64,000 bases of DNA from Macrostomum lignano. Lineage: Eukaryota. Below the pieces are notes generated by a model. The model ran no database searches, was not told the DNA's origin, and saw nothing but the letters and a program-made list of their open reading frames with translations. The stretch covers positions 190,134-254,133 of the forward strand of contig NIVC01001660.1 in assembly GCA_002269645.1 (NCBI GenBank), given 5' to 3'. Made by a program: the position numbers and the translations under genes. Positions 271 through 61,800 of the stretch are shown piece by piece (the stretch's first letter is position 1; the number at the start of each line of letters is the position of its first letter).

Positions 271-598
271 GCAGTACATGAGGGACACTTGCAGTACATG
301 AGGGACACTTGCAGTACATGAGGGACACTTGCAGTACATGAGGGACACTTGCAGTACATGAGGGACACTTGCAGTACATGAGGGACACTTGCAGTACATG
401 AGGGACACTTGCAGTACATGAGGGACACTTGCAGTACATGAGGGACACTTGCAGTACATGAGGGACACTTGCAGTACATGAGGGACACTTGCAGTACATG
501 AGGGACACTTGCAGTACATGAGGGACACTTGCAGTACATGAGGGACACTTGCAGTACATGAGGGACACTTGCAGTACATGAGGGACACTTGCAGTACA
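271..598. repeat. Perfect 20-bp minisatellite (GCAGTACATGAGGGACACTT), 16 full copies plus a partial copy
   Basis: Identical units read directly from 271 to 590, with no spacers. Confidence 0.97.
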
Positions 599-9800: not shown

Positions 9801-10969
9801 TGATTGGGATGCTGATAGGGAATGAGGAAGTGACTTTGAGGGCAAATGAATTTGAATTGTAACGATAGTGAAAAGGGACAGATCCATGCACGTAATTTTT
9901 TCGTCACACTGCATTTAAATGAATGTTCGCACATCCTTGCAGAAACTTTTTGGGGAATTAAAAAACTGTCGCTAAATAGCTATAAAGTCATTTCGCTCAC
10001 TTGAGTGGAGTGAGTGGAGGTTAAAAGGCTGTTCTGAGTCGCAACAAAAAAACAAAAAATTACGAGTACCTCCCTCCACACCCTGATATAAGTACTCTAA
10101 GCATTCTGCTTTCAGATTAGAAATGCCCCCTATAGAAATCCATTTGGGGTTGGAGGGACTCTCATTACTAAGGCTCTAAAATAACTTCGATTGTCGATGT
10201 GCAGAGAGCCAAATGCGAACTGAGGCTGCAGATTCAACTCGATTTGCTTGAGTTGAGTTTTGCTATTAGGTTCTATTGTTCGGGCGATCTGATAGTTTAA
10301 TCTGTTGTGGGTGGATCGATTATTCTTAATTAAGGTTCAATGAATCAACCTGTCGAATCTAAATAGTTTGGCTAGATTTGTGTACTACGCTCGGATCTGT
10401 TCAAGTTAAGGATTAGCTAGGAGAAGAAACAAAAACTTCTTGCTTGGTTTTAATCTTGGCTTACATAGCAATTTCAGTCTTTAGCATTGGGGACTAATTT
10501 AGACTTTTAGATAGTACCAAAGACCTTTGATAAAACTCAAAGATCGTGTAAATTTTAGGAGGTCGATTTCCTGAAATAAATACACTGCGGAGATAGGAAA
10601 AATATTTTTTTATCACAAAATAAATGATTGCATCCTTAGAATGAGTGATCCTTGGATGGTACATGCCTACTTTTCATTGGTTGAGGCTGGGGTCGTGTCC
10701 TAAGCTTTTGCTTGTTGGAGCACATTGATTGGCTGGTAATACTGTAGCGGTTTATTCGTTCGTGTTCAGACGGCTAATTATATATTTAGTATAATGGATT
10801 TTATAGTATATTTATATAACAATTTGTTACTTTGACCAATCAGGAGGCGGGGCGAGACGGTCCGGGCGACGACGAGTACAAAATTGAATTCTACCCGCGG
10901 TTGAAATACTATACAGATTCTCGGAATCATACAGTAAAACAAAAGTAATAATCAATTGTACATATACAT

Positions 10970-15463: not shown

Positions 15464-18400
15464 TCAATCCAACAAGAAGCGCAGACTGTCGATCGCCTCC
15501 TTCTTGGAAACCAGAGCCCAGGTTGGAGGCAACTCTTTGATTCCTTTTCGATGCTTAACCAGCAGCTTATACTTAAATGTCCACGAGAACCAGTGCCAGA
15601 ACTTTGCCGAATCGTTTCCTGCGTCGGGATCAATCTCCCACTCTGGAAAGTACTTTTTGTACTCTTTGTAAGGGTGATACACTTCTTGTTCGCTGTCGGC
15701 ACCTTGACAGTTTGGCGTCTGCTTACCTTTTCGTTTGCAAAAACCACATGAAAATCTGTCACCGCTACTTGCGAGAAATTCACAATTTTTGAATGTTAAC
15801 TGGTCAATTCCAATATAATACACACCTTCAACTCCAGGTGGTCTGTGCTGAATGCAGCCATGTGGGCTGCCATCTTTTTCGTAGTGATTTTCCTGAGACT
15901 TGCAGCACGGCTCGCTACAGAAGGGGCAGTGTTCTTTGCAGCCCCAGAGGCTCTGAAGCACATCGGAGTAGAGAGTGGAGTCTCCATGCCATTTGACTGT
16001 TGACTCGTCCATACTAGCGAAGTGCTTTACCAGTGAGGACTTGAGGTCGCCCAGGCCGCCTAAAAGGTGCTTCAGCATATCTTCCACTTTTACAGTAGAT
16101 TCGAAAGTGCAAACATGCTGCAAATTTCTAGGAAGCACGGCGAGCTCTTTTTCGGCCTCCTTACAGAATTTATCGACCCAAACTTTCAGCGAGGTGCACC
16201 GAGTTGCCGCCACTCTTGCAGCTTTTTCAGTGACCGCAATTATCGGCGCAATGAGCGATGACTCGAGATGGCCTGAAAATACAGTATTGCCATCCGTTGT
16301 TCTCTGAAACAGCTGACGGTTAATGAACTGCGTCAGCCATTTCAGAGCAGTAGTATGGGAATCTCTCACGTATTCAAGGATCGATTCTGCGTCATCTTGC
16401 TGTGCCATGTCGGTTAGCATGCGAACAATGAGCTGGTATTTTCCCCTGCCGATCTCGTTCAGCATTACTCCTCTCAATTTACCTGCCATTCTTTCCTGGA
16501 AAGCCTGTTTCATCACCGAGTCCAGATGGTCACAAATGAAATCAGCCACAATCTTGGCTTCCGCCTGCTGTTGAACAATGTTTCTAAACAAATTCAACAT
16601 TTTTGTCTTCGTATCCGCCAGCTTTGTTTTGATGCTGTTGGCTTCGTGAAAATTCCGCGTAATCTGCTCAAATATTGGGTATGCAGTGCTGAGGGCGAGA
16701 ATCACTACCTTGATTTCGAATGCAGGTGTTGTGCGGATATGATTGCTTGATAGTCCGATAGAGGAGTTTATTGCATCACGCACGCATTTTTGTATCCGCT
16801 TAACATGGACCTTTGAAAATCCACTTGACTCCCCTTTCATATCCTCGCAAAGACTTTTAACGGCCTTGAGAATGTCAGATACAACGTCTACTACTAGATT
16901 ACGCTCTTCTTTTTCTAGCTGACTGGTAAAAATACTAATGAATTTGTCTTTCATTGATCGTTTTGATATAATAAGCGTAACAGTGTCTCCTTTGGGAAAC
17001 AGAATTTCAAGTAAGCTGTCACTTTGAACCGCTGATTGTCTCTTTAATGGAATTTGATCCAAAAATGAGCGTACTTTTTCTAACTCATTATAGTAGATCT
17101 CTCGCAGTTGATCCACCACTTGAATCTCAACAAGTCTCAAGTCAACCGTTCTCTCAGATGGCAGCTGCTGCGTGAACTCCTGCCACAGAGCTTCGAATTC
17201 CTGCAGAATTTTTTCCTTTGGACTGCTCCTTAGCGTGGGTGCAAGTTCGGTGGCCCGTCTTATGATCCTCGACTCCCACTCCACCGTCCGTGAACCTTGC
17301 TGAAGCTCAACTTTTTGCCCGTCGCACAAGACTTGGAGCTTCTGCCGAAGTGACTGCTCAAGACTTTTCACACAATCCCTTAAAGACACTAACTTTCGCT
17401 CCTTCCATTGTATCGTGTACTCACTGTACTGGTTTTCATCCAAAAATTGGTTTAAGGACTTTAGACCTTCCCGCTGCCAAGTTTCAAGCATAGCACGAAG
17501 CTCACTTATCGCCCTCTGCTGCACATCCGCGACAGCATCGACAGTTTCGCATTTCCTAACAGGAATCGCTGCTGATTTATGAAGCCAGTCTTCGCTCAAC
17601 TCTTCAATGTGATTTGTCACTTCGAGAAATTTATTCTCCAAAAGGTTATATGCCTTGAGCTCGACACTGCTTTTAAAGCTGAACACAAAGTCCTCAGACA
17701 GTATTGCCTTCCACAGATCATTTACTCGATGAGAAAAGTCGCTGAATCCCAGATAGCTCTTCTGTTCTTTATCAAAAATGTGTAAAAGGTGCTGTTTAAC
17801 GTCCTGAACACCCATCGAGTAGCCCGGATTTACTGGACCCATGGGTGGGTCGCTCTGTAGCAGATCTGACATGAAGAATATATCGGTGTCTCTGTTGAAC
17901 TGCAGAATGTCTCCTAAACGCTTCACATCATTGAGACCTTCTTCTTCTGCAGCTTCCTTCGTCATTTTGTCGAGTTTCTGTTGTATCTTGAATGTCGCTT
18001 GCTGCATCATCTCTTTTGCTCCAGCCGCTGCTACATTCTGGTGTATGAAGATGCAGTGTCTGTGCAGATCTCGATCTTTGTTTGCCATCTTCATCCTGAT
18101 GAAGGCGTGAATCGCGATCTGTAAAATCTCATTCATCTCCGCAGCGTTCTCTCCTTTGATGTTGATGATAGTCACGTCTCCAAGTCCGATGACCAATGTA
18201 GCTAGCTCGTTGTCATGGTGATGTTTGTCCAGACCCAGCTCCGGAGCTCTCAGACCCTCGGTGTCGAGCACAGCGACATAGTCGAACGGCATTCCTGACT
18301 CCACCGGAACCAGCTGCAGAAATGCGCCTCGAGTACAGCGGCCTGCGCTCACTGCGAACTTCAGTCCGAACATGGTGTTGAGCAGAGTGGACTTGCCTGA

Positions 18401-21400
18401 GCTCTGCAGACCGAGCACGGAGATTACGTAGATCTTCTTGTCGCCGACCAGCTCCTGGCAGCTCTTGAGGATAGCTGAGATCCAGGCAGACGGGATGTTT
18501 CCAGCGTCGCCGTCGAGAATCTCTAGAGGAACTCCGCACAGCAAGAGTTTGGCCATCACGTGTGGAAACAGATTGATGTCAAGCGCTCGGAAAGTCTTTG
18601 TACTTTCTGAAGAGGCAGCTAAAATGGCCTCGTAGACTTGGCCCGCCTCTCTGAATATGTTTTCGAGGCCAATTGAAGCAAGCAGTATTTTATGGTCAAG
18701 TTCGTTGAGCTGATCATCTATTGCGGTCTGGGATGATTCATCCGCAGTTTCTTTACGCTGCCGCAATTCCTGCTGCATTTTTCTAAGCCTTGGCAAATGC
18801 TCTCTGGAAGAATTGTCAAAGAAAGATCGAATGCACTGAAGCCAAAGCTTAACCAGAAGCTCATTGTCGGCTATCTTTGTCAGTGTGGTAAGAAACTCCT
18901 CCATAATGGGACTGAGTTGATGGCACTGAGCGATTTGCTGGCGTCTGGCATTGAGACGCTGATGCTGAGCTTCCAACTTGTCTTCATCTGTTGCCTTAGA
19001 AGAGTTTTCTCTTTTGTAGTGGCGACTGTAGTCCATCCATTTTTTTTGCAAAGGAAGATGCTTTTTATTTAAGTTCATGATTCCACATTTCGATACTTCT
19101 CCAAAGATAGAGCTGCAAAGCTGGCTTGCCTGAGAAACGAGACATCCGTCATCAATGTAAACTTTGATTTCTCCATTAGATTTCTGCTCTATACCAACCT
19201 TTGCCAATGACTCTGACAGTGTTTGTTGGATTTCGCCAACTATTTCACGCTCTGGTCTTCCTTTCTTTGTGTCAACGCAGGAAAATGATTTAAGGATGCT
19301 CATCGACTCGCTACTCAACGGATTTGTGAGTGTTTGAGATCTGTAGAGAACCACTATCACTTCTAATTCCTTCATTTTTGACATGCTTTGAAGCTGGCTA
19401 AAGCACTCGGGCTGTGAAAGGGTGCTGACTTCCACAAATACAACTACAACTTTGGAGGCCGAAGTTAAAACCTGAGATTTGTCTGGAAAATCTAGCAAGT
19501 CACCTCTGAGGTTTGTTGCCAAGAAGGCTCGAGTCAGTTTAATGCTTCTGGACGGCAGAAATACGGTGGCCTCAACGAGTCCGTTGCTGCAGACTCTGCG
19601 CGCGTGGCCGTTGGTGCAGTCTCTGTGGAAGAACGTCTCATGACTGCTGCCATTGAGTAGGGAGTTCAGCAATTTGGACTTGGACACAGGCAAATCTCCA
19701 ATCCTCACAAATGATACCACCGGAAAATGATAATCTGATAGCAGGCTGGTCTCTATGTACTGGCCATTTTCGTTCATGAACTGAACTACAATGTCTTTCA
19801 GACCCCAGCTGTTCATAACCAGCGGCTTTCCAACAGTTGAATAGATGAATGGGAAAGCCAGCTTGCAAGCAAACAGAACTTTGCAGAGCATCTGTTGCAC
19901 CTCTTTGTCACAGCAGAGGTAGCTCGCAAGTAAAATATCCATCGGGTTCAGCTCATTCTCAGAGCTGCCTTCATCATCGTCCTCGAGGTTTAAAAGCGAA
20001 ATTTTTTTCGGTAAAGCCGTTGCCGTCGTCTCTGGAACCAAATTTCTCCCCTGTGCGTCGCAGCTGATGAGTGCGCGGATGACTTGCCAGGCAACGGAGT
20101 TTTCCTTCAAATTTCTGCGCTCGTCTTGGCTTCTCCTGACGAAAAGAACGTCCTTGCGCGAGATTCTCTCTGGATAATAAGACTTCAGCCCGAGATGTTC
20201 AACAGTATCTTGAACTGATCCAAATTTCATTGGCTTTCTCGGTTCCGCAACTCGTGGGGTTGTTGGCTGCGGATTGATAGTTGGTCGATCTGGAATCGAG
20301 TCTTGCCTTTTTGGAGGTGTAGGAGGTGGCGCTGGTGTTTCAAGCGTTGACATTGGTCCTGGGGATAGCGGTAGCGATTGTTGAGTAGTCGACGACGGAT
20401 CCGAGTCTTTCTGCACTGGATCCGATGGCTTTACTGTGTTGAGTCGCCTCTTTGGATTTTGTTGCGTCATCGTCTCAAACATTTTCTTTCTGGATGCGAC
20501 AGAACTGGTTGGCCTAATAATTTTATGCAGCTTAGTAAAGAGATCCGTCAAGGCTTGGTTGCTTTCCTCATCTCCAGCGAGCTTCCTCACCAGTGCATAG
20601 TCGATAGCTTCTAATGAGTCCAAGGTAACAATGTTTTTCTCTCTAAAGTACAACTCTATGAGGTTCAGAAACTCAGTGGACGTATATTCGGGGTGCTTTT
20701 CCGCAAGCATTTCCTTGGCCTTCAATGCAGCACTCGATAGACGGACTTCTTCTGCATCTAAAATTGTCAAATGGAAACAACTACCTGGTATGCTGTATAA
20801 TATTTTATTTATGCACAATTTATACGCTCGTAGGCTCGTATATTCGCAGAAAAATTATTTACACTGTGATTTCTTAACTGACCTTCTTGAGGACATGTAG
20901 TTCTTGTGGGAATTTCAAGTAATATTTCAATATTTTACTTTCGACAGCTAATAGTCGCAAAGTCGCAAAGTCGCAATTTTTTCTCAGAAAGGAATTAATT
21001 ATAGCATAAATTTATAATAATACGAGCGTACAGAAGAGAATCATGTTTTGATGGCATAATCTACCGTCTTGAATGTCGAGCCTCTTAATGTCAGCCGAGG
21101 TTGTCCTCTGGAGTCCCATTTTGCCTCTAAATTTAGCGTTATAGCACTTGTCGCAGAAAATGTCGCCCTGCGCTACGAACAATTTAGTCACTTGAAGCTG
21201 CGCATTGCATTCTCCTGTGAATCATGCAGCACACAAATAGCGGTGTTACCCACAGTTCAAATAACAATAACAAATAACAAATAACAATAAACTTTTACAG
21301 ATTTAGACATTTATAACCAGCACTGTGTTGTAATATACGAGTACAGGTTTAAGTAAAAATGTGCGGCATTATTTGTTGTAATGCCAATTAGTTTTTGTAG

Positions 21401-21724
21401 TAACTGAGTCAGAGGCCGTGTTTGCTGTGTAGCCAAACTCTTACAAATCTCGCCGCGCTGGGCACGCGTCTATATATTATGGAGTTAGAATTGGGGTGGC
21501 GGCACCCACCCCACTCCGCAGCCAATCAGACTGCCCGGGCATACCATACTGTGCGTACGCACACTACAGTTTTGACAATTGAAAGCTTGGCAGTCAGGCT
21601 GCCATGAGCTGGTTCACTTACCGTTACCGCACCGCAGGCAGTTTTTGTGCCAGCTCTGGTTGGCTGCTTTCTGAGCCTCTATCAGAAACACCGGTTTGCT
21701 GCACCGGGGGCATATTTCATCCAT
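15464..21724 (-). CDS. LIM-domain-fused very large GTPase (VLIG/GVIN1-URGCP family), about 1848 aa. Exons 21724-21622, 21214-21065, 20757-15464
   Basis: Main exon: G1 GLQSSGKS, G2 GRCTRG, G3 DTEG, FIHQNV, a degenerate N-terminal VSFVRIG..SKSKLLN module and C-terminal CPFC..PC/H..C..HRP motif, all typical of the family. The two upstream exons have GT-AG boundaries in matching phase 1 and encode a LIM domain. Total 5547 nt, in frame. The family call is high confidence; the splice model is inferred. Confidence 0.85.
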
Positions 21725-23510: not shown

Positions 23511-26500
23511 TCAAAAAAGACTCCGAAGACTTTCGATGGCAGCAGACTTTGAAACCGATCGCCATTCTTGCGGAATTCGATCCATCCTGATTCCTTTGGT
23601 TCGTTCCAGCTCCTCCTTGAAGCGCCACACGAACCATTTCCAAAACACTGCGTCCGTATTTCTCTCGTCTGGAAGGATATCCCAGTCTGGGAAGTACCTT
23701 CGGTAAGCAGAATAGCGGTGTTGGTCATTTGGGTCGAAATTGCGCTGGACGCAGTTCTCCGACGGTTTGGTGCTATATTGGCACGCTGAGCAGGAAAATG
23801 TGATTCCTCGAGGTCCAGTGTCAAGATGCAGCAAGGATCCGCAAGTATGAGCCATAAACTCCCCTGTTGCCACCCAGTGCCAGCCGGAGACTCCCTGTGG
23901 CCTGTGCTGCACGCAGTGATGCGGACTGCCATCAATGTCAAAATGGTGCAACAAAGACTTGCAGCACGGCTCTCTGCAGAATGGGCATTGCGCCTTGCAG
24001 CCCCAAATTTTGCTGAGCACAGATGAGCACAAATCTGTTTCACCGCAAACAACTTCTTTAACATTCCGGACATTTGAATAGTGTTGCATCAGACTACTTT
24101 TCAGATTGCTCATTTCAGAGACTACAGTGCGAACAACTTCCTCCAAATTTGCTGATTTGTAACTTTTCAGCTGAACCAGATCATTTGAACCGAACTGAAT
24201 ATCAGATGGCATGAGGGAAGGAAGCTTCTCTATCCACTCTTGAAAACTTTTCGATTGAGCTGCAGAATCTTGTATAGATCTTTTTGCACTTTCCAGCTGC
24301 GGGTCAATCAGTGACTCAGCTATTGCGATAAATTCACAGTCAGCCTGCCCACTATGTCCTAGAAATTTATGATTAATGTAGTGATCAAGCCAGCGGATAG
24401 CACTTTCATATGGTTCATCGATATACTTAGCCAATGAGCTGAAGTCCTCTCTATTCGCCATGTCTTTCAGCATGCACACAATCAGGTGATATTTTGTCCT
24501 CCCCAAATCATTCAAGATCCTGCTTCGTAGGTCAGCTCCGACTCTCAAATCAACCAACCGAATCACCAAAGCGCGCAGATGGCCCATGAAATACTCAGCC
24601 ACGATTTCACTGTTGCATTTTCCTTGGACTGTGCTTTCAAAGAGTCTCCACATTCGTTCTTTTGACTCTGCGAGTTTTGCTTTATCACCGCTTTTATTCG
24701 TATCAACAAACATTCTGTCCATTGCGACAAGGTGTGGAAAGGCGAATCTGAATGCAATGACTGTCAGTCTTATTTCCAACTCGTTAGTGAGTCCAATCCC
24801 CTGCTCCCTAAATTTCTCTAAGGCTAGTTTTTGCAAACCATCACGAATCATTTGATGAATATCTGGGATGTCCGAGACGTTGTTTGGAATATTTTTAAGA
24901 ACTGCTTTTGCTAATTTTTTGCTTTCAACAAGTACTGTGATGGACCTGTTCTTTTTTGCATCTGCTGCGTTTGATAACGGTTGGGTTCCGTATCTCGAGT
25001 CGCCTTCTATCGATGCGTAAAGGGTAGATCGATTTGGCACAAGACTATGTTCCACTACATTTTCGATTGACTCATCAGGCTTTGATGAAATTGACGATTC
25101 CCGAAGAACATCGTCGAGGGTGCGACCCTCGCTTGAGTAAAATTGCTTTAGGTGGTCTACCATCATCCTTTCTATTACAGGTCGTTTGTTTTTCGGTTCA
25201 GATGCAAACTGACTTTCTAAATGCTTCCAAAATTTTTCAAATTCCTCGCGGATTTTTTTAGCCGAAGCGTTCTTTTCTCTTTTAGCGAATTCCTTCCCTC
25301 TTGTCACAACCATCTGTTCCCATTTCTGCTGCTGAAAACCCTGCTCTAATCGCTCTCTCTGCTCGATGCACATCGCTTCCATTTTTCTGTGTGTCTCAAG
25401 TTCAAGGTTGCGCAAGCTGTGTTTTAGATTCTCCAACGTTTTTTCTTGAAAATGCAGCACGTACTCTCGGTAAGGGCTTTCATTGAAAAACCTTTTTAAA
25501 TTGTCCGACGTCTCCTTGCACTTTTTCTTGAGAAAATTCTTCAGATTCCCTTTGGATCTTTCTAAAGTCTCAGTGATTAACTTGCAAGTTGAACTCGCTC
25601 GAATGTCATTGGCTACTGTACTCTGCAGCCATTCCTCTACGCGGTCTTCAACACCTCCCATCGTTTCTAGGAATCTTTTTTCAAGTCTGATATATGCTTT
25701 CCGCTCGATGCTATTTCTAAAACTGAACACAAAGTCCTCAGACAGTATTGCCTTCCACAGATCATTTACTCGATTAGAAAAGTCGCTGAATCCCAGATAG
25801 CTTTTCTGTTCCTCATCAAAAATGTGCAAAAGATGCTGCTTAATGTCCTGAACACCCATCGAGTAGCCCGGATTCACTGGAGCCATGGGAGGGTCGCCTT
25901 GTAGCAGATCTGACATGAAGAATATATCGGTGTCTCTATTGAACTGCAGAATGTCTCCAAAACGCTTTACGTCATGGAGACCTTCTTCTTCTGCAGCTTC
26001 CTTCGTCATGTCGTCAAGGGTTTGCTGCATCTTGAATGTCGCTTCCTGCATCATCTCTTTTGCTCCAGCCGCTGCTACATTTTGGTGAACAAAAATGCAA
26101 CGCCGTTTTATATTGATCATTCTGTTCGCTATCTTCATCCTGATGAAGGCGTGAATCGCAATCTGTAGGATATCCTTCATCTCAGCAGCGTTTTCTCCTT
26201 TGATGTTGATGATAGTCACGTCTCCAAGTCCGATGACCAGTGTAGCCAGCTCGTTGTCATGGTGATGCTTGTCCAGACCCAGCTCGGGAGCTCTCAGACC
26301 CTCGGTGTCGAGCACAGCGACATAGTCGAACGGCATTCCCGACTCCACCGGAACCAGCTGCAGAAATGCGCCTCGAGTGCAGCGACCTGCGCTTACTGCG
26401 AACTTCAGTCCGAACATGGTGTTGAGCAGAGTGGACTTGCCTGAGCTCTGCAGACCGAGCACGGAGATCACGTAGATCTTCTTGTCGCCGACCAGCTCCT

Positions 26501-29080
26501 GGCAGCTCTTGAGGATAGCAGAGATCCAGGCAGACGGGATGTTTCCAGCGTCGCCGTCGAGAATCTCAAGAGGAACTCCTAGCATCAGAAGATTTGCAAA
26601 GCACTTTGGTAAGCTGCTTACCAAAGGCCTTTTATCGGTTAAAATGTCGATTTCGGCTTCTTCAAAGGCTTTAAAAAGTTGTCCTTCTTCTCGGAAAAGA
26701 TGTTCCAGTCCTACAGAGCTACTTCGCAATTTCTGTTCGAGCTTTTCAAGCTCCTGTTCAGTCATGTGTCTCTCTTTGTGCGCTTGCTTTGTGCAAAGTT
26801 TGTCTACCAGCTGTCTTTTGCGTTCTAACAAAGCAGGAAAGATTTTCCTTGACTTCTCATCAAGCTTCAGCTTTATGCATTGTACGTACAGCTTTGCTAC
26901 TAAACCATTGTCTTTGCAATCACTGGCTGCTTTCAATTTTTTTGCAAATGATAGCGCAAGTGTCTTTGATTCTTTCAGAATTTCGATCTGCTTATTTCGA
27001 ATACCGGCCCTTTTTGACGAGCTAATCTCAATTTCTTCTGGAGACTTGATATTGTACTCCTTTCGTAGTAGTTGACTGTATTCTAGCCACAGAGCCGTCA
27101 GGGGCAAACATTCTTGTGCCAAGTTTGTCTGGTCTGCCTCGTCAATTTTACTCAGCAGCGCGACGGCACTTTCCATAGTTCCACCTAGGAAACTATCGAA
27201 ATCGGTCTGCTGGAGTTGCTGCGCGAACGGAATTTCTGTATTTAAATCTTCATTGACCAGCTTTTGAGCCAGCTCGCGACTTAGGTCACTGAGAAGCTCC
27301 CGTTCCGCTTTTGGTCTCCTTCCACTAAAAGCTGTTACTGTTGGCAACGATGCAACAATTTCTTTTTCCTCTTCGGTGTATTCTTGAGACTTGCTTTTAG
27401 TAGATCTGACCATTTCTTTGAATACAACGAGAATGATCTCAGCTTTTTCTCTCAGATTCCGAAGACTTTGCAAGCACTCTTGCCCTCTAAGTATTTCCAA
27501 CCCGACAAAAACTACAATGACCTGGGAGACTTCGGCCAATAGGCGAGCTTGCTCATCGAACTCTAAAACGTTTCCTCGAAGATTCGCTGTCAAGAATGGC
27601 CGGACCATGGCGGCAGAAGCGCTTGTCTTCGACGGCAGAAACACTGTGGCCTCAACCAGACCGTTGCTGCAAAGCCTTCGAGCTTGTCCGCCGGAGCAGT
27701 CTCTGTGAAAGAATGTCTCATGACTGCTGCCGTTGATAAGAGAGTTCAGCAGCTTGGACTTGGACACAGGCAGCTCTCCGATCCTCACAAAGGACACCAC
27801 TGGAAGCGGGTAATCTGAAACTAGACTGGTCTCGACGTACTGACCGTTCGGATCTCGAAATTGGAGAATGATGTCTCTCAGGCTCCAGTTGCTCATCACT
27901 AATGAGTGCTTCTCATCTCGGTAGATAAGTGGAAAAGCCAACTTGCAGGCAAACAGAATTTTGCAAAGCATTTGCTGCACCTCCTGGTCGCAGCAGAGGT
28001 AGCAGCAGAGAAGAGCATCGATTGGGTTGATTCCTTCCTCCGAATTATCCTCTTCTTCCTCTTGCAAACTAATTTTTGATTGCAAAAGGATGCTGGAATC
28101 CGGCCTAACAGCTCGCCCGTTATAATTAAAAAGCTGTCTTAGTAGATACCAGGACGTTTGAGTTGGCTCCAGGCTCTCTGGTGCCTCATTGTTAGATGCT
28201 ACGACTTTAATTATTTGCGTGAAAGGTATGGACATTGGAAACCAGTCACTCATTCCTATTTTAGCCACCATCTCTCTCAAATTAGGAAAATCTTTAAGCG
28301 CACCCTTCAAATCCGATTTTTCCGTGTAAGTTTCTTGAGCTTGTCTCTCTTGCTCTGCTTCACTTTCGTGCGAGTCGACTTCAAGAGATTTATGAGTTGT
28401 TTCTTCATCTTCAGCCTCGCTTTCCGATTCCGAACTCTCAGAGAGCGTTTCATCATCATTGCTTGTTTCAGTTGTTAATCTAGATTTTGGCGAGTTCGAA
28501 GACTCGGCGAATTTCTTGTTTAAGTGTCCAGCTTGGTTTTCTTGGTTGTCGAGTTCATTGCACTGCACGGGAGCTCCCTTTTCGTCATCACTCTCTTGAT
28601 CCGAACAGTTGTTAGGAACTCTCACGCAGGCTTCGGGTTGAATCTGGACGTCTTCTAACTGCAGAGTCAACAGGTACTCCAAGAGAGCATTAATATCCAC
28701 TGAGCAGCATTTTTCCGGTTCATGGGCATGAGTCTTCTTTTCTAAGTTGGGTGCTAACTTTTGTTCAAGTTCTTTTCTAGCGCTTTCGTACTTTGACTGA
28801 TATTTTTTAACTTGCGCTATAGCATCTCTATTTTCTGCAAAAACAGATTTTATTTCATCCAGTTGTCTTAAAACACGGTCTGCCATTTCTTTCTCTTCTT
28901 GGCTGTCTTGTTGCTGAGCAAAACTCTCGTGGTCATTTTGAAAGCTCAGATGAAAAATGCTTGGCACGTTTTTCACGGACACGTACTTTTGAAGTTTGTC
29001 ATTCCACTTTTCCGCATCTTCCTGAGTCAGAAACTGACGAAGAGCGTCTTCAATGGCCCTGCTCACCGATGGCGACTCAC
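23511..29080 (-). CDS. Second very large GTPase (VLIG/GVIN1-URGCP family), main exon of about 1856 codons
   Basis: Same G1/G2/G3 motifs and C-terminal Cys/His module as the paralogue. A polypyrimidine acceptor TTTTTCATTCCAG| at 29081 suggests that the ORF start at 29294 is intronic. Confidence 0.9.
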
Positions 29081-29559
29081 CTGGAATGAAAAATGACAAA
29101 GCCAGTGGGCCAGTTGCTACTAATTGGCTAGGTCGCGTGACCAGATTTGGATAAAAATCTGGTGCAAAAAGTATTGAACATTGGTTTAGATTTCTACGAC
29201 TATAAAATTTAAGCCGGTGCCAATAGGAAATTGTTTTTGCTCGTATCAATTTCACCACCGTTTGCACAATTTTATACATCTGAAGGCTATTCACTGATAA
29301 GTTAAATATTTTAAGTCTCCTATCATCTGATCAAATCAATTGATGAAATTAATTTGAAGCACTGAAGCTTCCGAACTGGCACACCTGCGCTTGTGCCAAT
29401 GTGAAAGTTTATTTAACTTGAATTAAATAACTTGAATTAATTTAACTTGTGCTGGTGTGTGCCAATAAAACTGCTCCCTCGTGTTGCTTGTGTTTCTGGT
29501 TCTACATGTATGTGTCTATTTCTAAAGGAGTGTATCTATCGTTCTCTAAAGAGAATTTT

Positions 29560-53024: not shown

Positions 53025-54311
53025 TTAAACTTTACTGGATGAATTGTTGATCATGTTAAGCTTCACCTTCCTCTCAAATGCATAGACAATGTACAGGTCC
53101 ACGGGTGTTGCGGCAGTCCTTTCAATGTTAGTCACGATATTCACAGGGCTGTTATCAGTAGGCATTTGTCTGGCAGACACATCAGCGCCAAACATCGGAT
53201 ATAGAGTTCCATATTGGAGAGCAGTGATAGCAATTCCATTGTTCTCTTTCACAGCCAAGTCGACCAACTCGCTGTAAAATTTGCTAATCTTGTTCTGACT
53301 GAAATCTCCATTTTGTGGCAGTGCAGGGTAAAGATTATCACTGATTTCATGCTGAATGGACCGCACGTCTCCATGCATGTAGCGTATAATGCTATTTGGG
53401 TTTCTCATATTAATAATGATATACCTTGGATTGCTGCATGATCCCTCTTTGATGCAGATGTTTGTTCTAGTTTCGTTTCGCTCATCTCGACACATGTAGG
53501 CCGTGTATGCAACATCAATGTCCTTCTCTATTGCCTTGAGATAATCCGCTTTTAGTGCAGTCTTTGGCTCAATGACTTCCAAATACAGCTCGATTCCAGT
53601 TAGCTTCACCTCCATCCTTGTGTGGTCCGCCCCAGTCCACAACACTCTACTGCGATCATCTCTAGTCATCTTAAAGGTGTAGCTAAAGTTACTAGTCAGT
53701 CGATTAAATGTATTACAGAATCCACTCATGAATCTCAATGGTACAAATACATCAACAGACCGATACAGCGGGTTCTTAGCAGCATCATCAGCACCTTGCA
53801 ATGCATAGTTGTATCTCTTCTTCCTCTTTTTATAGCCACTGTCATTGATATCTCCTTCTTTTTCATCTGCAATAAAACCCGCACCACTTCCCAATTGAAT
53901 AAAATCAGGATTCTCGATCAAACAATGAGCGTCATAGACAATTCCAAAGTTGGCGATTCGCTCCAACTCAGTGCTCCCATTCGATACACTAAACTCCTTG
54001 AACATGTACGCCCAAAAGTTACTGATCAGAGCCACATCCGCATCATGCTTGTCAACGTTAGCACGAGCCGCATCCGCACCACCCTTTGTCTTGAATTGAA
54101 ATGTCATATGGAAGCCGCTCTTAAGACTGTGCACACTAACCAAAGACGAACATCCATTGTATGTAAATGTCAGTGTTTGACCAGGACCAAGATTAGTTTC
54201 ATTCTGATTTTCCTGACTGGGAACTCTTACCTGAGTCGCTTTGATTGTGCTATTATCACTCAAAATAGGCTTGTTAATTTTGTAGAAAACTGGTGTCAGT
54301 GGGTCGTTCAT
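53025..54311 (-). CDS. Major capsid protein (double jelly roll, hexon-like), 428 aa
   Basis: Beta-rich. Motifs NFWAYMFKE, GY.KRK, FVPLRFMSGFC, LTGIELYL, PRYIII and YPMFG.DVS resemble Polinton MCPs in pattern and size. Confidence 0.88.
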   Translation of the reverse strand: MNDPLTPVFYKINKPILSDNSTIKATQVRVPSQENQNETNLGPGQTLTFTYNGCSSLVSVHSLKSGFHMTFQFKTKGGADAARANVDKHDADVALISNFWAYMFKEFSVSNGSTELERIANFGIVYDAHCLIENPDFIQLGSGAGFIADEKEGDINDSGYKKRKKRYNYALQGADDAAKNPLYRSVDVFVPLRFMSGFCNTFNRLTSNFSYTFKMTRDDRSRVLWTGADHTRMEVKLTGIELYLEVIEPKTALKADYLKAIEKDIDVAYTAYMCRDERNETRTNICIKEGSCSNPRYIIINMRNPNSIIRYMHGDVRSIQHEISDNLYPALPQNGDFSQNKISKFYSELVDLAVKENNGIAITALQYGTLYPMFGADVSARQMPTDNSPVNIVTNIERTAATPVDLYIVYAFERKVKLNMINNSSSKV

Positions 54312-58889: not shown

Positions 58890-61800
58890 CTAATCTCCAG
58901 TGCCCGAACGGTAGACTGTTAATGTATTGTCATCAAAAATGAATCTCTTGTTATCTGCACCTGACAGTCCAATCTTCTTTTGCTGAATTGTGTGAATAAT
59001 ATGGTTTTTAGATTGTAGCTTTGAGAACTCATGTGATGTCTTTTTGTTGCAATTCAAGGCGTCTCTGTATTCAGCTTCATTAATTTCCTTCCTAACCACA
59101 CGTTTCGGAATTCCCTTTGATTTTTTAATTGGGTCTGACGACTCACATTTTACAAAATAGGACTTTGCTCTCAACCCAATGAATTCAGTGATTATGTCAC
59201 CAGCAATCTCGTCCTTCATTTTCCCAATCACTTTCTTGTTAGTGGCGTCAAACACTTGATCGCCATTCTGTGTCCTGAAAGATTCATCATACTCAGACAA
59301 GTCAAACAAATCTTTTTGCTGCAGCATGTCCTGATAAATGTCTTCTGTTTGAATGTCCATAATAAAACTGTCTGTGTCAGTGTACAAGAGTTTCATTTTA
59401 TCCTTGTACTGCTGCTTCATGCCATAGAAGAACTGGTACATCAGACGTTTTGATTCGTCGAGAACAGTGACACCTGTATAGATCGGCTTGCGCAGCGTCA
59501 CCTTGGTTTTGTAAAATATGATCACACCTAAGTAGCTATTAAAGATATGGAGTTCTTTGAATGTTGGCTTTGACATATTTGCCTGAATAACAGCAGGCTC
59601 TGATGAGGTAACAAGTTTCAGGTTTGTTCTTTTCCGCTCATTCTCAAGAGTCTTGCCATAGACAGAGTTGTTGGCCAACTTAAAGAGGTTCTTGTCAAAG
59701 TCGTTGGTTGCTTTGGTCCTAAACTGGGTGTTCTTATCAATGTAGGGTTTCATCCACGCTTCCTCTGTAAATGTAAGAGCCCTGTGAACTTGGTGACCCT
59801 GCAACCAAGTGAGATAAAATACTGAAGCAGTTTGTAATGGATTTTGTAACGTGTCTTGTTGTTTAGATTCTGTGTTAGTTTCTCTGTATGTTCTTTTTCT
59901 GTTCCTGACAGGTGCCAAGTTCCATTATTATCATTGGGAGTTTCGATTATTTTCGGGCACTTGATGTTCTCTGGGAAGGGTGGAAAGTCAGAGAAATAGT
60001 CGTGAAGCTCTGGTGGAATGTAAACATCAACTTCATAAATGGCAGCCAATGAAAAGTCCTTTGAATTCTGATGAGGGTAGCCATCGAAAATCTCTAACTG
60101 GAAGATCTTGACTCATCGCCCACCCGTAGAGATTATTAGCGTCCAAGTAAGTAATGTAGTTTGAGGGCTGCTCCTTATTGTAAGATTCAATGTAGGGATT
60201 GTTTGCTTTTGCATATCTATGTGCAAATTGAGATTCCCCCTCGCTTTGACGATTCGACAAAATTGTACATGTCAATGTCTGTAAGAAGTTCAATGTACCA
60301 ATCTGGATCTTGATCCCATTTCATTTTAAGCAAAGATTCCCAGCTAGTGGCAGGCAGAGACACATAATGTGCTGGATCGAGGCCATATGCTGTGTACCAG
60401 GTGTATCTGAAGGTTTCAAACACATCGGCCAGCAGAAACACATCTGTGAAGAGGTAAAGCAGGTGATACTGGAAGAAGTTTTGACAATTAAAGTAATTAT
60501 AGACATGCTTCGCGTGCTCATAGTCTTTGTCAGAGATTCCAGAGTCTGTTAGCTTTGAAAAGAACTTCTCCTGTGGTGGTAAACCTTCTTCAAATACGTG
60601 ATACCCAGTAATATTTTCATAGGGGTAGAAGCCTTTGGTTCTCAGGAGTTTAAATGATTCATCACTGTTGTTAATTTTACTTGCAAACATCTTTGTATAT
60701 GTACATTGTTCATCTTTTAGATTCTTGCTTAGTTCGTCTAGACTGGCAGCTAGAAATTGATATGAATCCTTCAGTCTTATTTTACCTGTACCCGAATTAT
60801 CCTGTTTAATATCAACACACTTAAACTTCTCCTTGTTCTCTGCGATGCAATCAAGGTGTATGTCTGGAATCATGCCGATTTTTTCAACTATTAAATGCAT
60901 GTCATAGTTCTTTGCGTTGTGACAAAATATCGTTAGATCATGAATGTTCGATTTTAGCTTTAGATTACAGGTGTTATGCGCTGCACCTCTAAATTTCCCA
61001 GTAAAGTGGCAGTGGTCCCTAACGGTGGGGTTTTTAATATCAGTGCAAGTTAAATGTTTCCTGCAGATGTGGCAATGAGTTGCTGATAGGAAATTGCTTT
61101 CATCCTCCTCAGTCATCATTATTGGAACAGGTTGAAGGGTGCTAATCACTTTTGCAACTCTAACATTCTGGCAATAAACTGCTCCACACACTGCTCTCCA
61201 AAGAAATAATTATACTCAACAAGTCCTTTTGTATTAATAAAGGCATATGCTACTGAATTGGGGACATGTTTTTGAGTTTGGAGTTTGTTTTTGAGTTTCC
61301 GGCATGATTGAGCATTCGAAATCAGCATATACAACAAATGGGAGCTTCTCCATCTTGTGATAGTTCTTAAACCGGAGATACTTCTCTTCAGCTGAAGGAA
61401 GAGAGCAGTTGTGTCGGGTGATCCTCGCATGATAATTCATGCTCTTAGTTTTTCAAAGCGTTCAGGTCCACTGTAATGCTTAAGGCACAAGCGGCAGATG
61501 GCAACAGCCTCGTGATGATTATTCAACTGCTTGTGAATGAGTCTTGAAAGATCTTTAATCCAAACATAGTGAGCCTCCTCTAGTAAATTACCAATCACTA
61601 GAAGATCCACTTCAGTCCGCCTTTTCCCCTCAGGATCTAAAACGTCTTTGCTACATCTGACCGGTTGAACTTTCTCAGTTTTTTCACTCCACTCAAAGAC
61701 TGTGATTCTAATTTTGTTATTAAACACTTCTTCTAGCTTTGGGATCTGAGAGATCGCCAAGCCTCCTTTGTCAAACCTGATTCCCTTCTTTTCGCATTCG

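What the first reader, a model, noticed from the sequence alone, without database searches (positions are those of the whole stretch)
20757..21724. Hidden LIM domain spliced onto a very large immune GTPase (LIM-VLIG fusion)
Seen: two small minus-strand exons missed by the ORF track, 21724-21622 (donor G|GTAAGT) and 21214-21065 (acceptor TTCACAG|, donor G|GTAGAT). They read MDEICPRCSKPVFLIEAQKAANQSWHKNCLRCGNGECNAQLQVTKLFVAQGDIFCDKCYNAKFRGKMGLQRTTSADIKRLDIQD, i.e. C-x2-C-x17-H-x2-C-x2-C-x4-C-x17-C-x2-C. Both introns are phase 1, and the second lands on TTTTAG|AT at 20758, in frame with the 5.3-kb GTPase exon. An in-frame stop precedes the ATG. Established: this is a CRIP/CSRP-type LIM pattern (x4 variant as in plant LIM2), LIM domains often bind actin, and VLIG/GVIN1 proteins are immune-associated GTPases. 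I do not know of a VLIG carrying a LIM domain. Inference: an integrated sensor or targeting domain analogous to the LIM in the plant NLR CHS3/DAR4, possibly coupling the GTPase to actin or acting as a decoy.
Basis: partly seen in the sequence, partly recalled or inferred. Interest (0 to 1): 0.88.

Follow-up and report, generated by a model that had tools for sequence, protein, structure and literature searches.

The report
LIM domain fused to flatworm giant GTPase
Two small exons really do place a zinc-binding LIM domain in frame at the front of a very large immune-type GTPase gene of the flatworm Macrostomum lignano; the architecture is rare and undescribed, though it already sits unremarked in two public database entries, and what the LIM does is untested.

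Summary
Minus-strand exons 21724-21622 and 21214-21065 encode a complete LIM domain (Pfam 41.6 bits, cut-off 22.9; nearest solved relatives are CRP1/CRP2/MLP). Both introns are phase 1, and splicing onto the 5.3-kb exon at 20757 gives an uninterrupted 1848-aa protein with URGCP and URGCP-GTPase (VLIG) domains.

The window is Macrostomum lignano. A syntenic copy in GenBank, BOX15_Mlig019641g2, is about 90% identical in coding DNA. Its transcript-derived annotation has the same three exons, the same splice sites and the same LIM+VLIG protein. An older merged public model of this very locus (UniParc UPI0007A154EE) also contains the LIM exons. So the fusion is very probably real, and it is not new to databases.

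It is unremarked in the searchable literature and rare. Among the 150 closest of 2553 VLIG cluster representatives, only these Macrostomum entries carry a LIM. A third copy has lost it: one zinc-ligand Cys is now Arg and exon 2 is gone.

The LIM core is under moderate purifying selection (dN/dS about 0.35), with all eight zinc ligands kept. Actin coupling and a decoy role remain inference. The exact junctions are uncertain by 6 nt. A LIM-less isoform starting at Met101 cannot be excluded.

The parts
21622..21724 (-). Exon 1. It holds the start codon and the first zinc finger of the LIM domain (MDEICPRC...WHKNCLRCGNG). The donor is AACG|GTAAGT and the intron after it is phase 1.
   Evidence: sequence and translation. 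LIM profile positions 1-30, 54 bits. The same exon and donor are in L001 and are annotated in GenBank.
21215..21621 (-). Intron 1 (407 nt), GT...AG, splitting the LIM between its two zinc fingers.
   Evidence: The homologous intron in L001 is 206 nt and full of indels, while the flanking exons have no indels.
21065..21214 (-). Exon 2. It holds the second zinc finger of the LIM (ECNAQL...FCDKCYNAKF) and a 21-aa linker tail. The acceptor is TTCACAG| and the donor is GACG|GTAGAT, phase 1.
   Evidence: LIM profile positions 29-57, 44 bits. Homologous exon in L001 at 10364-10513.
20758..21064 (-). Intron 2 (307 nt, or 313 nt if the CAG acceptor at 20754-20752 is used). Read-through from exon 2 stops after 17 codons.
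   Evidence: The L001 intron is 1795 nt, but the 11 nt at the donor and about 25 nt at the acceptor are conserved.
15464..20757 (-). Exon 3 (5294 nt including the TGA). It encodes the whole VLIG/URGCP-type GTPase body. The first in-frame Met inside it is at 20710-20708, which is Met101 of the fusion.
19199..19951 (-). URGCP domain (PF25496).
   Evidence: 163.6 bits against a cut-off of 27. Coordinates.
17816..19009 (-). URGCP-like (VLIG-type) GTPase domain (PF25683). The P-loop GLQSSGKS is at 18412-18389 and DTEG at 18265-18254.
   Evidence: 373 bits against a cut-off of 55. for the motifs.
15839..15940 (-). C-terminal Cys/His-rich motif CKEHCPFCSEPCCKSQENHYEKDGSPHGCIQHRP, shared with the other Macrostomum VLIGs.
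   Evidence: The database's precomputed Pfam hits list PF26772 for the copy P0002, named GVIN1_C.
23511..29294 (-). Context: the upstream tandem VLIG paralogue without a LIM. It is the orthologue-type of Mlig019641g1 (P0004). Its 5' exon or exons were not mapped.

Best explanation
This is a three-exon Macrostomum lignano gene for a roughly 1846-1848-aa VLIG/GVIN-family dynamin-like GTPase. A single CRP-class LIM zinc-finger domain, carried on two small 5' exons, has been added to its N-terminus.

Shown:
- The exons, the reading frame and the domain identities.
- Conservation of exon structure and splice sites in a diverged syntenic copy whose transcript-derived GenBank model is LIM+VLIG.
- Retention of all eight zinc ligands.

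Inferred history: the LIM exons were captured at the DNA level. The intron between the two zinc fingers is retained, which argues against retroposition. The capture came after this subfamily split from its tandem LIM-less neighbour and before the window, L001 and L002 copies diverged.

Inferred mechanism: the LIM is an N-terminal protein-interaction or targeting module. It would dock the oligomerising GTPase to a partner, with F-actin or an actin-associated protein as the leading candidate because CRP-class LIMs bind these. A roughly 20-aa fast-evolving linker and a helical, Pro-rich N-terminal region would leave the LIM flexibly tethered to the GTPase body. A LIM-less isoform from Met101 may coexist.
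For: Gene structure and domains:
- The spliced ORF is intact at 1848 aa.
- LIM, URGCP and URGCP_GTPase all score above Pfam cut-offs. P-loop and DTEG motifs are present.

Support from the syntenic copy L001 (GCA_002269645.1, NIVC01002061.1):
- It has the same order: LIM-less VLIG, then LIM-VLIG.
- Its donor 1, acceptor 2, donor 2 and acceptor 3 match the window.
- Its GenBank CDS (P0002) reads ...RCGNGECNAQ... and ...VNFQADVEEV... across both junctions.
- That annotation is purely transcript-based: StringTie/TACO plus a de novo assembly, TBONE and TransDecoder (PMC5730564).

Coding signature:
- The LIM exons have no indels over 241 nt, while introns differ 407 against 206 nt and 307 against 1795 nt.
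- dN/dS is 0.35 for the LIM core and 1.08 for the linker tail.
- Read-through tails beyond the exon-2 donor are not conserved.

Other:
- An independent public model of this locus (P0024) also splices the LIM exons to the GTPase.
- The nearest solved relatives are CRP1 LIM2, CRP2, MLP and CRIP.
- Human GVIN1 acts at the interface of bacteria and host actin (10.1101/2025.03.24.645074). This makes an actin-related adaptor plausible but does not show it.
Against: - There is no RNA evidence for this exact locus. The transcript support comes from a copy that is 85% identical at the protein level.
- Donor 2 (GTAGAT) and acceptor 3 (TAG) depart from the M. lignano motifs GT[GA]AG and CAG (PMC8629364).
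- The third copy (L002, P0003) has a broken LIM: exon 1 carries Cys to Arg and exon 2 is undetectable. Its annotated CDS starts exactly at the exon-3 acceptor. The GTPase can therefore be expressed without the LIM, and the acceptor may also serve for SL trans-splicing.
- Exon 3 has its own in-frame Met only 16 codons in.
- A single LIM domain is a generic interaction module. The glycine-rich segment that follows CRP LIMs is absent. Actin binding is untested.
- The dN/dS values rest on few substitutions (16 non-synonymous and 10 synonymous in the core).
Confidence: 0.7

Rival explanations
1. The locus mainly makes two separate products. One is a small LIM-only protein of about 101 aa, made by retention of or polyadenylation in intron 2, and resembling CRIP. 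The other is a LIM-less GTPase translated from Met101, for instance after spliced-leader trans-splicing at the exon-3 acceptor. On this view the fusion is a minor or artefactual isoform.
For: - Weak donor 2 and acceptor 3 relative to the species motifs.
- AATAAA-like strings near the 3' end of intron 2 in both the window and L001.
- The L002 copy's CDS begins exactly at the acceptor, 5'-partial.
- 30% of M. lignano genes are SL trans-spliced (PMC8629364).
- Exon 3 has an in-frame Met 16 codons in.
Against: - The transcript-derived GenBank model of the L001 copy joins all three exons.
- Phase compatibility and all four splice sites are conserved between copies that diverged at dS of about 0.3.
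- The read-through tail after exon 2 is not conserved.
- The ATG at the end of the SL would be out of frame with the GTPase.
Confidence: 0.2
2. The LIM is a recently captured and now functionally neutral appendage. The fusion protein is made, but the LIM contributes nothing and is being lost.
For: - One of the three copies has already lost it.
- The LIM region is more diverged than the body: 74% aa identity against about 85-86%.
- The linker dN/dS is about 1.
Against: - All eight zinc ligands, the ORF, both intron phases and four splice sites are intact in two copies. In contrast, neighbouring non-coding DNA is about 70% identical and full of indels.
- The LIM core dN/dS is 0.35.
Confidence: 0.15
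3. The LIM is an integrated decoy or sensor. It would mimic a host CRP-like cytoskeletal protein targeted by pathogens, so that effector binding to the LIM activates GTPase assembly. This is analogous to integrated domains of plant NLRs such as CHS3/DAR4.
For: - The VLIG family is immune-associated in vertebrates.
- The family carries other lineage-specific N-terminal additions, for example SNTX-MACPF/fn3 in P0034.
- The LIM evolves faster than the GTPase body.
- A LIM-less paralogue sits next to it in tandem.
Against: - There is no evidence of positive selection on the LIM core (dN/dS 0.35).
- The CHS3/DAR4 integrated domain is a LIM-peptidase of the DA1 family on a TIR-NLR. None of those modules is here.
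- Nothing is known about flatworm pathogens targeting CRP proteins.
Confidence: 0.08

Closest known systems
Macrostomum lignano BOX15_Mlig019641g2 (P0002; GenBank 'hypothetical protein, partial', contig NIVC01002061.1)
   Same: - Same three-exon structure, splice sites and LIM+URGCP+URGCP_GTPase architecture.
- Same tandem neighbour.
- 85% aa and about 90% coding nt identity.
   Different: - A distinct, diverged copy: LIM region 74% identical, different Met position, intron 2 of 1.8 kb against 0.3 kb.
- Never characterised or discussed in any searchable paper.
Vertebrate GVIN1/VLIG-1 and URGCP (interferon-induced very large GTPases)
   Same: - URGCP and VLIG-type G domains, the P-loop and the C-terminal Cys/His-rich region.
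- 27-29% identity over about 85% of the length.
- Human GVIN1 forms coats on cytosolic bacteria and blocks actin-tail formation.
   Different: - Vertebrate proteins have no LIM. Their long N-terminal regions belong to other families (PF26773 and PF26771, as precomputed).
- Flatworms have no interferon system (general knowledge), so regulation must differ.
CRP/CSRP-MLP and CRIP class LIM proteins
   Same: - Best sequence matches of the LIM: CRP1 LIM2 at 44 bits, then CRP2, MLP and CRIP.
- A CY-x-x-KF motif follows the last ligand.
   Different: - The second finger has C-x4-C instead of C-x2-C. The two extra residues sit exactly at the exon junction.
- No glycine-rich repeat follows the LIM.
- It is not a small LIM-only protein but the N-terminus of a 1848-aa GTPase.
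Arabidopsis CHS3/DAR4 NLR with an integrated LIM-peptidase domain
   Same: An immune-type NTPase carrying a LIM-containing accessory domain that is absent from close paralogues. This is a conceptual analogy only.
   Different: - In CHS3/DAR4 the domain is C-terminal, of the DA1 LIM-peptidase type, on a TIR-NB-LRR, working with a head-to-head partner, CSA1.
- Here the domain is an N-terminal CRP-type LIM alone on a dynamin-like GTPase with a head-to-tail neighbour.

Membership tests
VLIG / GVIN / URGCP very large GTPases | URGCP-like (VLIG-type) GTPase domain above the Pfam gathering score | tested here: met
   PF25683, 373.1 bits against a cut-off of 55, profile positions 9-396 of 396.
VLIG / GVIN / URGCP very large GTPases | URGCP domain N-terminal to the G domain | tested here: met
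   PF25496, 163.6 bits against a cut-off of 27.
VLIG / GVIN / URGCP very large GTPases | Intact nucleotide-binding motifs (G1 GxxxxGKS, G3 DxxG) | tested here: met
   GLQSSGKS at 18412-18389 and DTEG at 18265-18254.
VLIG / GVIN / URGCP very large GTPases | Full-length similarity to named GVIN1 proteins | tested here: met
   E-values of 1e-144 to 1e-159, at 27-29% identity over 85-88% of the query, to bird, turtle, crocodile and fish 'interferon-induced very large GTPase 1'.
VLIG / GVIN / URGCP very large GTPases | Pathogen- or cytokine-induced expression and a cell-autonomous defence function | not testable with these tools
   No expression or infection data could be reached. No paper on Macrostomum VLIGs was found.
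LIM domain (PF00412) | Match above the Pfam gathering score over the full profile | tested here: met
   41.6 bits against a cut-off of 22.9, profile positions 1-58 of 58. The P0002 LIM scores 34.3 bits.
LIM domain (PF00412) | Eight zinc ligands in the order C-C-H-C / C-C-C-C(H/D) with standard spacing | tested here: met
   C5, C8, H26, C29, C32, C37, C55 and C58 are all present in the window and in L001. The spacing is standard except C32-x4-C37, where x2 is usual. An alternative donor 6 nt upstream would restore x2.
LIM domain (PF00412) | Binds two zinc ions and folds as a double zinc finger | not testable with these tools
   The single-sequence AlphaFold2 model was unusable (pLDDT 39). No biochemistry is available.
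CRP/CSRP-CRIP class of LIM proteins | LIM most similar to CRP-class LIMs | tested here: met
   The top PDB matches are CRP1, CRP2, MLP and CRIP.
CRP/CSRP-CRIP class of LIM proteins | Glycine-rich repeat directly after the LIM, in a small LIM-only architecture | tested here: not met
   The tail is KFRGKMGLQRTTSADIKRLDIQD, with no G-rich repeat. The domain is fused to a 1764-aa GTPase body. It is CRP-like in origin but not a CRP family member.
CRP/CSRP-CRIP class of LIM proteins | Binding to F-actin, alpha-actinin or zyxin | not testable with these tools
   This rests on general knowledge of CRPs only and was not tested.
Integrated-decoy immune receptors (CHS3/DAR4 type) | NLR (NB-ARC/LRR) chassis with a DA1-type LIM-peptidase integrated domain | tested here: not met
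   Pfam finds no NB-ARC, TIR, LRR or peptidase domain. The definition of CHS3/DAR4 is taken from 10.1101/2022.06.21.497003.

The most novel reading that the evidence does not exclude
The LIM is a true integrated sensor or decoy on an animal dynamin-like immune GTPase. It would mimic a host CRP-like actin regulator, so that pathogen interference with that regulator, or actin structures built by a pathogen, recruit and trigger assembly of the giant GTPase. This would be the first 'integrated domain' logic described for the VLIG/GBP-type defence GTPases. It would also provide a direct molecular link between a VLIG and actin, which human GVIN1 antagonises only indirectly.
Probability: 0.08. Interest if true: 0.8.

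Novelty: new variant of a known kind. Interest (0 to 1): 0.45.

Why it matters
VLIG/GVIN proteins are the least understood of the large immune GTPases. The first mechanism, human GVIN1 coating cytosolic bacteria and blocking actin tails, was reported only in 2025. How these proteins find their targets is unknown.

A natural variant with a defined, small, CRP-type interaction domain on its N-terminus gives a handle on targeting. LIM-less and LIM-decayed copies in the same transgenesis-capable animal serve as built-in controls. Swapping or deleting the LIM and asking where the GTPase goes is a direct experiment.

The locus also shows that this family gains N-terminal modules by exon capture in invertebrates. 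It illustrates too that short 5' exons are missed by ORF-based views and garbled by automated gene models.

Tried and rejected
- **Short N-terminal protein searches.** The search for homologous proteins with N-terminal queries of 324 aa and 170 aa returned one fungal LIM protein and nothing, respectively. Neither recovered the 85%-identical P0002. This reflects the word index, not absence, so I drew no conclusion. It used two of the three searches.
- **Exact-product look-ups.** The exon-3 ORFs from TTG 20818 and from Met101 are not on record. No transcript contig for this exact locus was obtained.
- **Structure prediction.** AlphaFold2 on residues 1-184 without an alignment gave pLDDT 39. I ran no fold search on it.
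- **Literature.** Nothing was found for 'LIM domain'+'VLIG', for 'Macrostomum'+'very large GTPase', or for the Mlig gene identifiers.
- **Promoter/terminator scan.** The bacterial-type scan is not applicable to a eukaryotic locus and I ignored it.
- **Chance ORF.** Rejected on the Pfam and PDB scores and on conservation in L001.
- **LIM exons as part of a separate neighbouring CRP gene.** Rejected as the sole explanation, because the transcript-derived model joins them to the GTPase and the read-through tail is not conserved.
- **Membership in the CRP family or the CHS3 type.** Rejected because defining features are not met.
Full report
**1. Observation**

On the minus strand the sequence shows an ATG at 21724, preceded by in-frame stops 15 and 17 codons upstream. 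The exon structure is:
- Exon 1: 21724-21622, donor AACG|GTAAGT.
- Exon 2: 21214-21065, acceptor TTCACAG|GA, donor GACG|GTAGAT.
- Exon 3: acceptor TTTTAG|AT opening the long exon at 20757.

Exon lengths of 103 and 150 nt make both introns phase 1. The concatenated CDS is 5547 nt, giving 1848 aa with a single terminal stop.

The 84-aa N-terminal peptide matches Pfam LIM over the whole profile at 41.6 bits (cut-off 22.9). Exon 3 carries URGCP at 163.6 bits and URGCP_GTPase at 373 bits. The nearest solved proteins to the LIM are chicken CRP1 (second LIM, 44 bits), CRP2, MLP and CRIP. A six-frame scan with a small LIM profile found only these two half-domains in the 64-kb window.

**2. Source and relatives**

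The full fusion hits Macrostomum lignano proteins first:
- P0002 (BOX15_Mlig019641g2, partial, 1826 aa): 85% identity, 100% coverage, precomputed Pfam list including LIM and URGCP_GTPase.
- P0003 (Mlig027448g1): 86% identity, no LIM.
- P0004 (Mlig019641g1): 44% identity.

The P0002 sequence reads through both junctions, as ...LRCGNGECNAQ... and ...VNFQADVEEVGLSS....

Its contig (L001, GCA_002269645.1 NIVC01002061.1) is collinear with the window: a LIM-less VLIG, then the LIM-VLIG. Coding DNA is about 90% identical and intergenic DNA about 68-75%. In L001 the four splice sites are the same strings as in the window: AACG|GTAAGTGAACC, TTTCACAG|GAGAATG, G|GTAGATTATG and CCATTTGACAATTTTAG|ATG.

The GenBank annotation of that assembly was built only from transcript evidence. 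It used StringTie and TACO on RNA-seq plus a de novo transcriptome, then TBONE cutting at SL and poly(A) sites, then TransDecoder (PMC5730564). The three-exon LIM+VLIG model of the copy therefore rests on spliced RNA. This is the strongest support for the fusion, but it is evidence from a copy, not from this locus.

**3. A public model of this very locus**

The exhaustive HMMER search found 2553 VLIG-like cluster representatives. Its top hit, P0024 (UniParc UPI0007A154EE, 3625 aa), maps back to the window at 95-100% identity from 28655 down to 3955. It is a chimeric automated model that merges the upstream VLIG, the LIM exons, the GTPase exon and downstream genes.

It uses the same exon 1/exon 2 junction. 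For exon 3 it uses the acceptor 6 nt further on (ATGCAG|AA, exon start 20751), giving ...LDIQDEEVRL. This identifies the window as M. lignano. It also shows that the 'hidden' exons were already picked up by a gene predictor, though in a garbled model.

**4. How common the architecture is**

I scanned the 150 best representatives, together with all other proteins fetched, using a LIM regular expression and a local LIM HMM. Only P0024 and P0002 contain a LIM.

The nearest non-Macrostomum relatives have none. These come from the nemertean Lineus, the octocoral Dendronephthya, the sea urchin Lytechinus, frogs and unnamed ENA contigs. Other M. lignano VLIG subfamilies (Mlig023000, Mlig002402, Mlig017367) also lack it.

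No searchable paper links LIM with VLIG, discusses Macrostomum VLIGs or names these genes. About 2400 weaker representatives were not screened.

**5. Constraint on the LIM**

Between the window and L001:
- The LIM exons have no indels over 241 nt.
- Intron 1 differs 407 against 206 nt, and intron 2 differs 307 against 1795 nt.
- Nei-Gojobori dN/dS is 0.35 for the 59-codon LIM core (16 non-synonymous and 10 synonymous differences).
- dN/dS is 1.08 for the 21-codon tail.
- dN/dS is 0.25 for the first 81 codons of exon 3.
- All eight zinc ligands are kept in both copies.

The read-through peptide beyond the exon-2 donor differs completely after four residues. This argues that the donor, not the downstream frame, is what is conserved.

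The third copy (L002, NIVC01001902.1) has an exon-1 remnant in which ligand Cys32 is Arg (LRRGNG). It has no detectable exon 2 and carries unrelated inserted sequence. Its annotated CDS is 5'-partial and starts exactly at the exon-3 acceptor. So the LIM is dispensable for expressing the GTPase in at least one copy.

**6. Open points on the gene model**

- Donor 2 (GTAGAT) and acceptor 3 (TAG) are weaker than the species motifs GT[GA]AG and CAG (PMC8629364).
- Both junctions have in-frame alternatives 6 nt away. The upstream donor would produce the canonical CLRC-GE-C spacing. However, it is GTAAC, and the transcript-based copy uses GTAAGT.
- Exon 3 has no in-frame ATG upstream of the acceptor, and its first Met is 16 codons in.
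- The M. lignano spliced leader ends in ATG, which would be out of frame here. A trans-spliced LIM-less mRNA would therefore start at Met101.
- I could not obtain any RNA for this exact locus.

**7. Mechanism**

Shown: an intact GTPase with P-loop and DTEG motifs, preceded by a complete CRP-class LIM on a fast-evolving linker.

Inferred: the LIM acts as an N-terminal docking module for the GTPase. CRP-class LIMs bind actin and actin-associated proteins (general knowledge). Human GVIN1 coats bacteria and blocks their actin tails. An actin-related partner is therefore the leading guess, but nothing here tests it.

The decoy reading is not excluded. It has no positive support: the core dN/dS is below 1. 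The CHS3/DAR4 comparison fails every membership feature.

**8. Verdict**

This is a real and rare domain architecture that already sits unremarked in GenBank and UniParc. It is a new variant of the VLIG family rather than a new kind of system. It is of moderate interest, mainly as an experimental handle on how giant GTPases are targeted.

Noticed in passing
window 26579-25691 and 18535-17647 (both minus strand): The two tandem VLIG genes are only 15-35% identical in protein over most of their length. They nevertheless share an 891-nt G-domain block at 91.6% nucleotide identity (84-89 of every 100 aligned residues). The same block is shared across copies in L001 and L002. This looks like gene conversion of the GTPase core between otherwise divergent neighbours.
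   Followed up: partly
window about 50.8-62.2 kb: A cluster of ORFs on both strands. It includes a protein-primed type-B DNA polymerase fragment with an Endonuclease VII motif (60220-61191, PF03175, 39.7 bits). It also includes a weak double-jelly-roll-like match (53028-54311, PF21738, 23 bits, below the cut-off). This suggests a Polinton/Maverick-type element.
   Followed up: no
L002 7697-7792 and 7800-9990: The paralogue Mlig027448g1 keeps a LIM exon-1 remnant in which a zinc-ligand Cys has become Arg. It lacks exon 2, and about 1.9 kb of unrelated sequence lies in its place. Its CDS begins at the conserved exon-3 acceptor. It is a natural LIM-loss allele of the same subfamily.
   Followed up: partly
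window 21628/21622 and 20757/20751: Both LIM-VLIG junctions have tandem in-frame alternative splice sites 6 nt apart (GTAACG/GTAAGT donors and TAG/CAG acceptors). The upstream donor would restore the canonical C-x2-C LIM spacing. The public model P0024 uses the downstream acceptor.
   Followed up: partly
window 28655-3955 (minus strand), protein P0024: UniParc UPI0007A154EE is a 3625-aa chimeric automated model. It fuses the upstream VLIG, the LIM-VLIG and downstream genes, the last with an EGF-like and transmembrane C-terminus. It also skips parts of the GTPase exon, so it is a misleading public entry for this locus.
   Followed up: partly
protein P0034 (ENA contig, 2746 aa): A VLIG relative is modelled with an N-terminal stonustoxin-type MACPF, a helical domain, a thioredoxin-like domain and an fn3 domain before the URGCP and GTPase domains. 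This is either another lineage-specific N-terminal fusion or a merged gene model. The source organism is unknown.
   Followed up: no
window about 282-578 (plus strand): Six-frame ORF fragments recur every 20 nt, which indicates a tandem repeat of roughly 20 bp and about 300 bp in total length (seen in the output).
   Followed up: no
window 29294-29403 and upstream: The upstream VLIG ORF has no Met at the position where P0004 starts (MAEGRDEDEPPSMNRAIE...). Alignment to L001 also continues beyond the ORF. Its true 5' exon or exons therefore lie further upstream and were not mapped.
   Followed up: no
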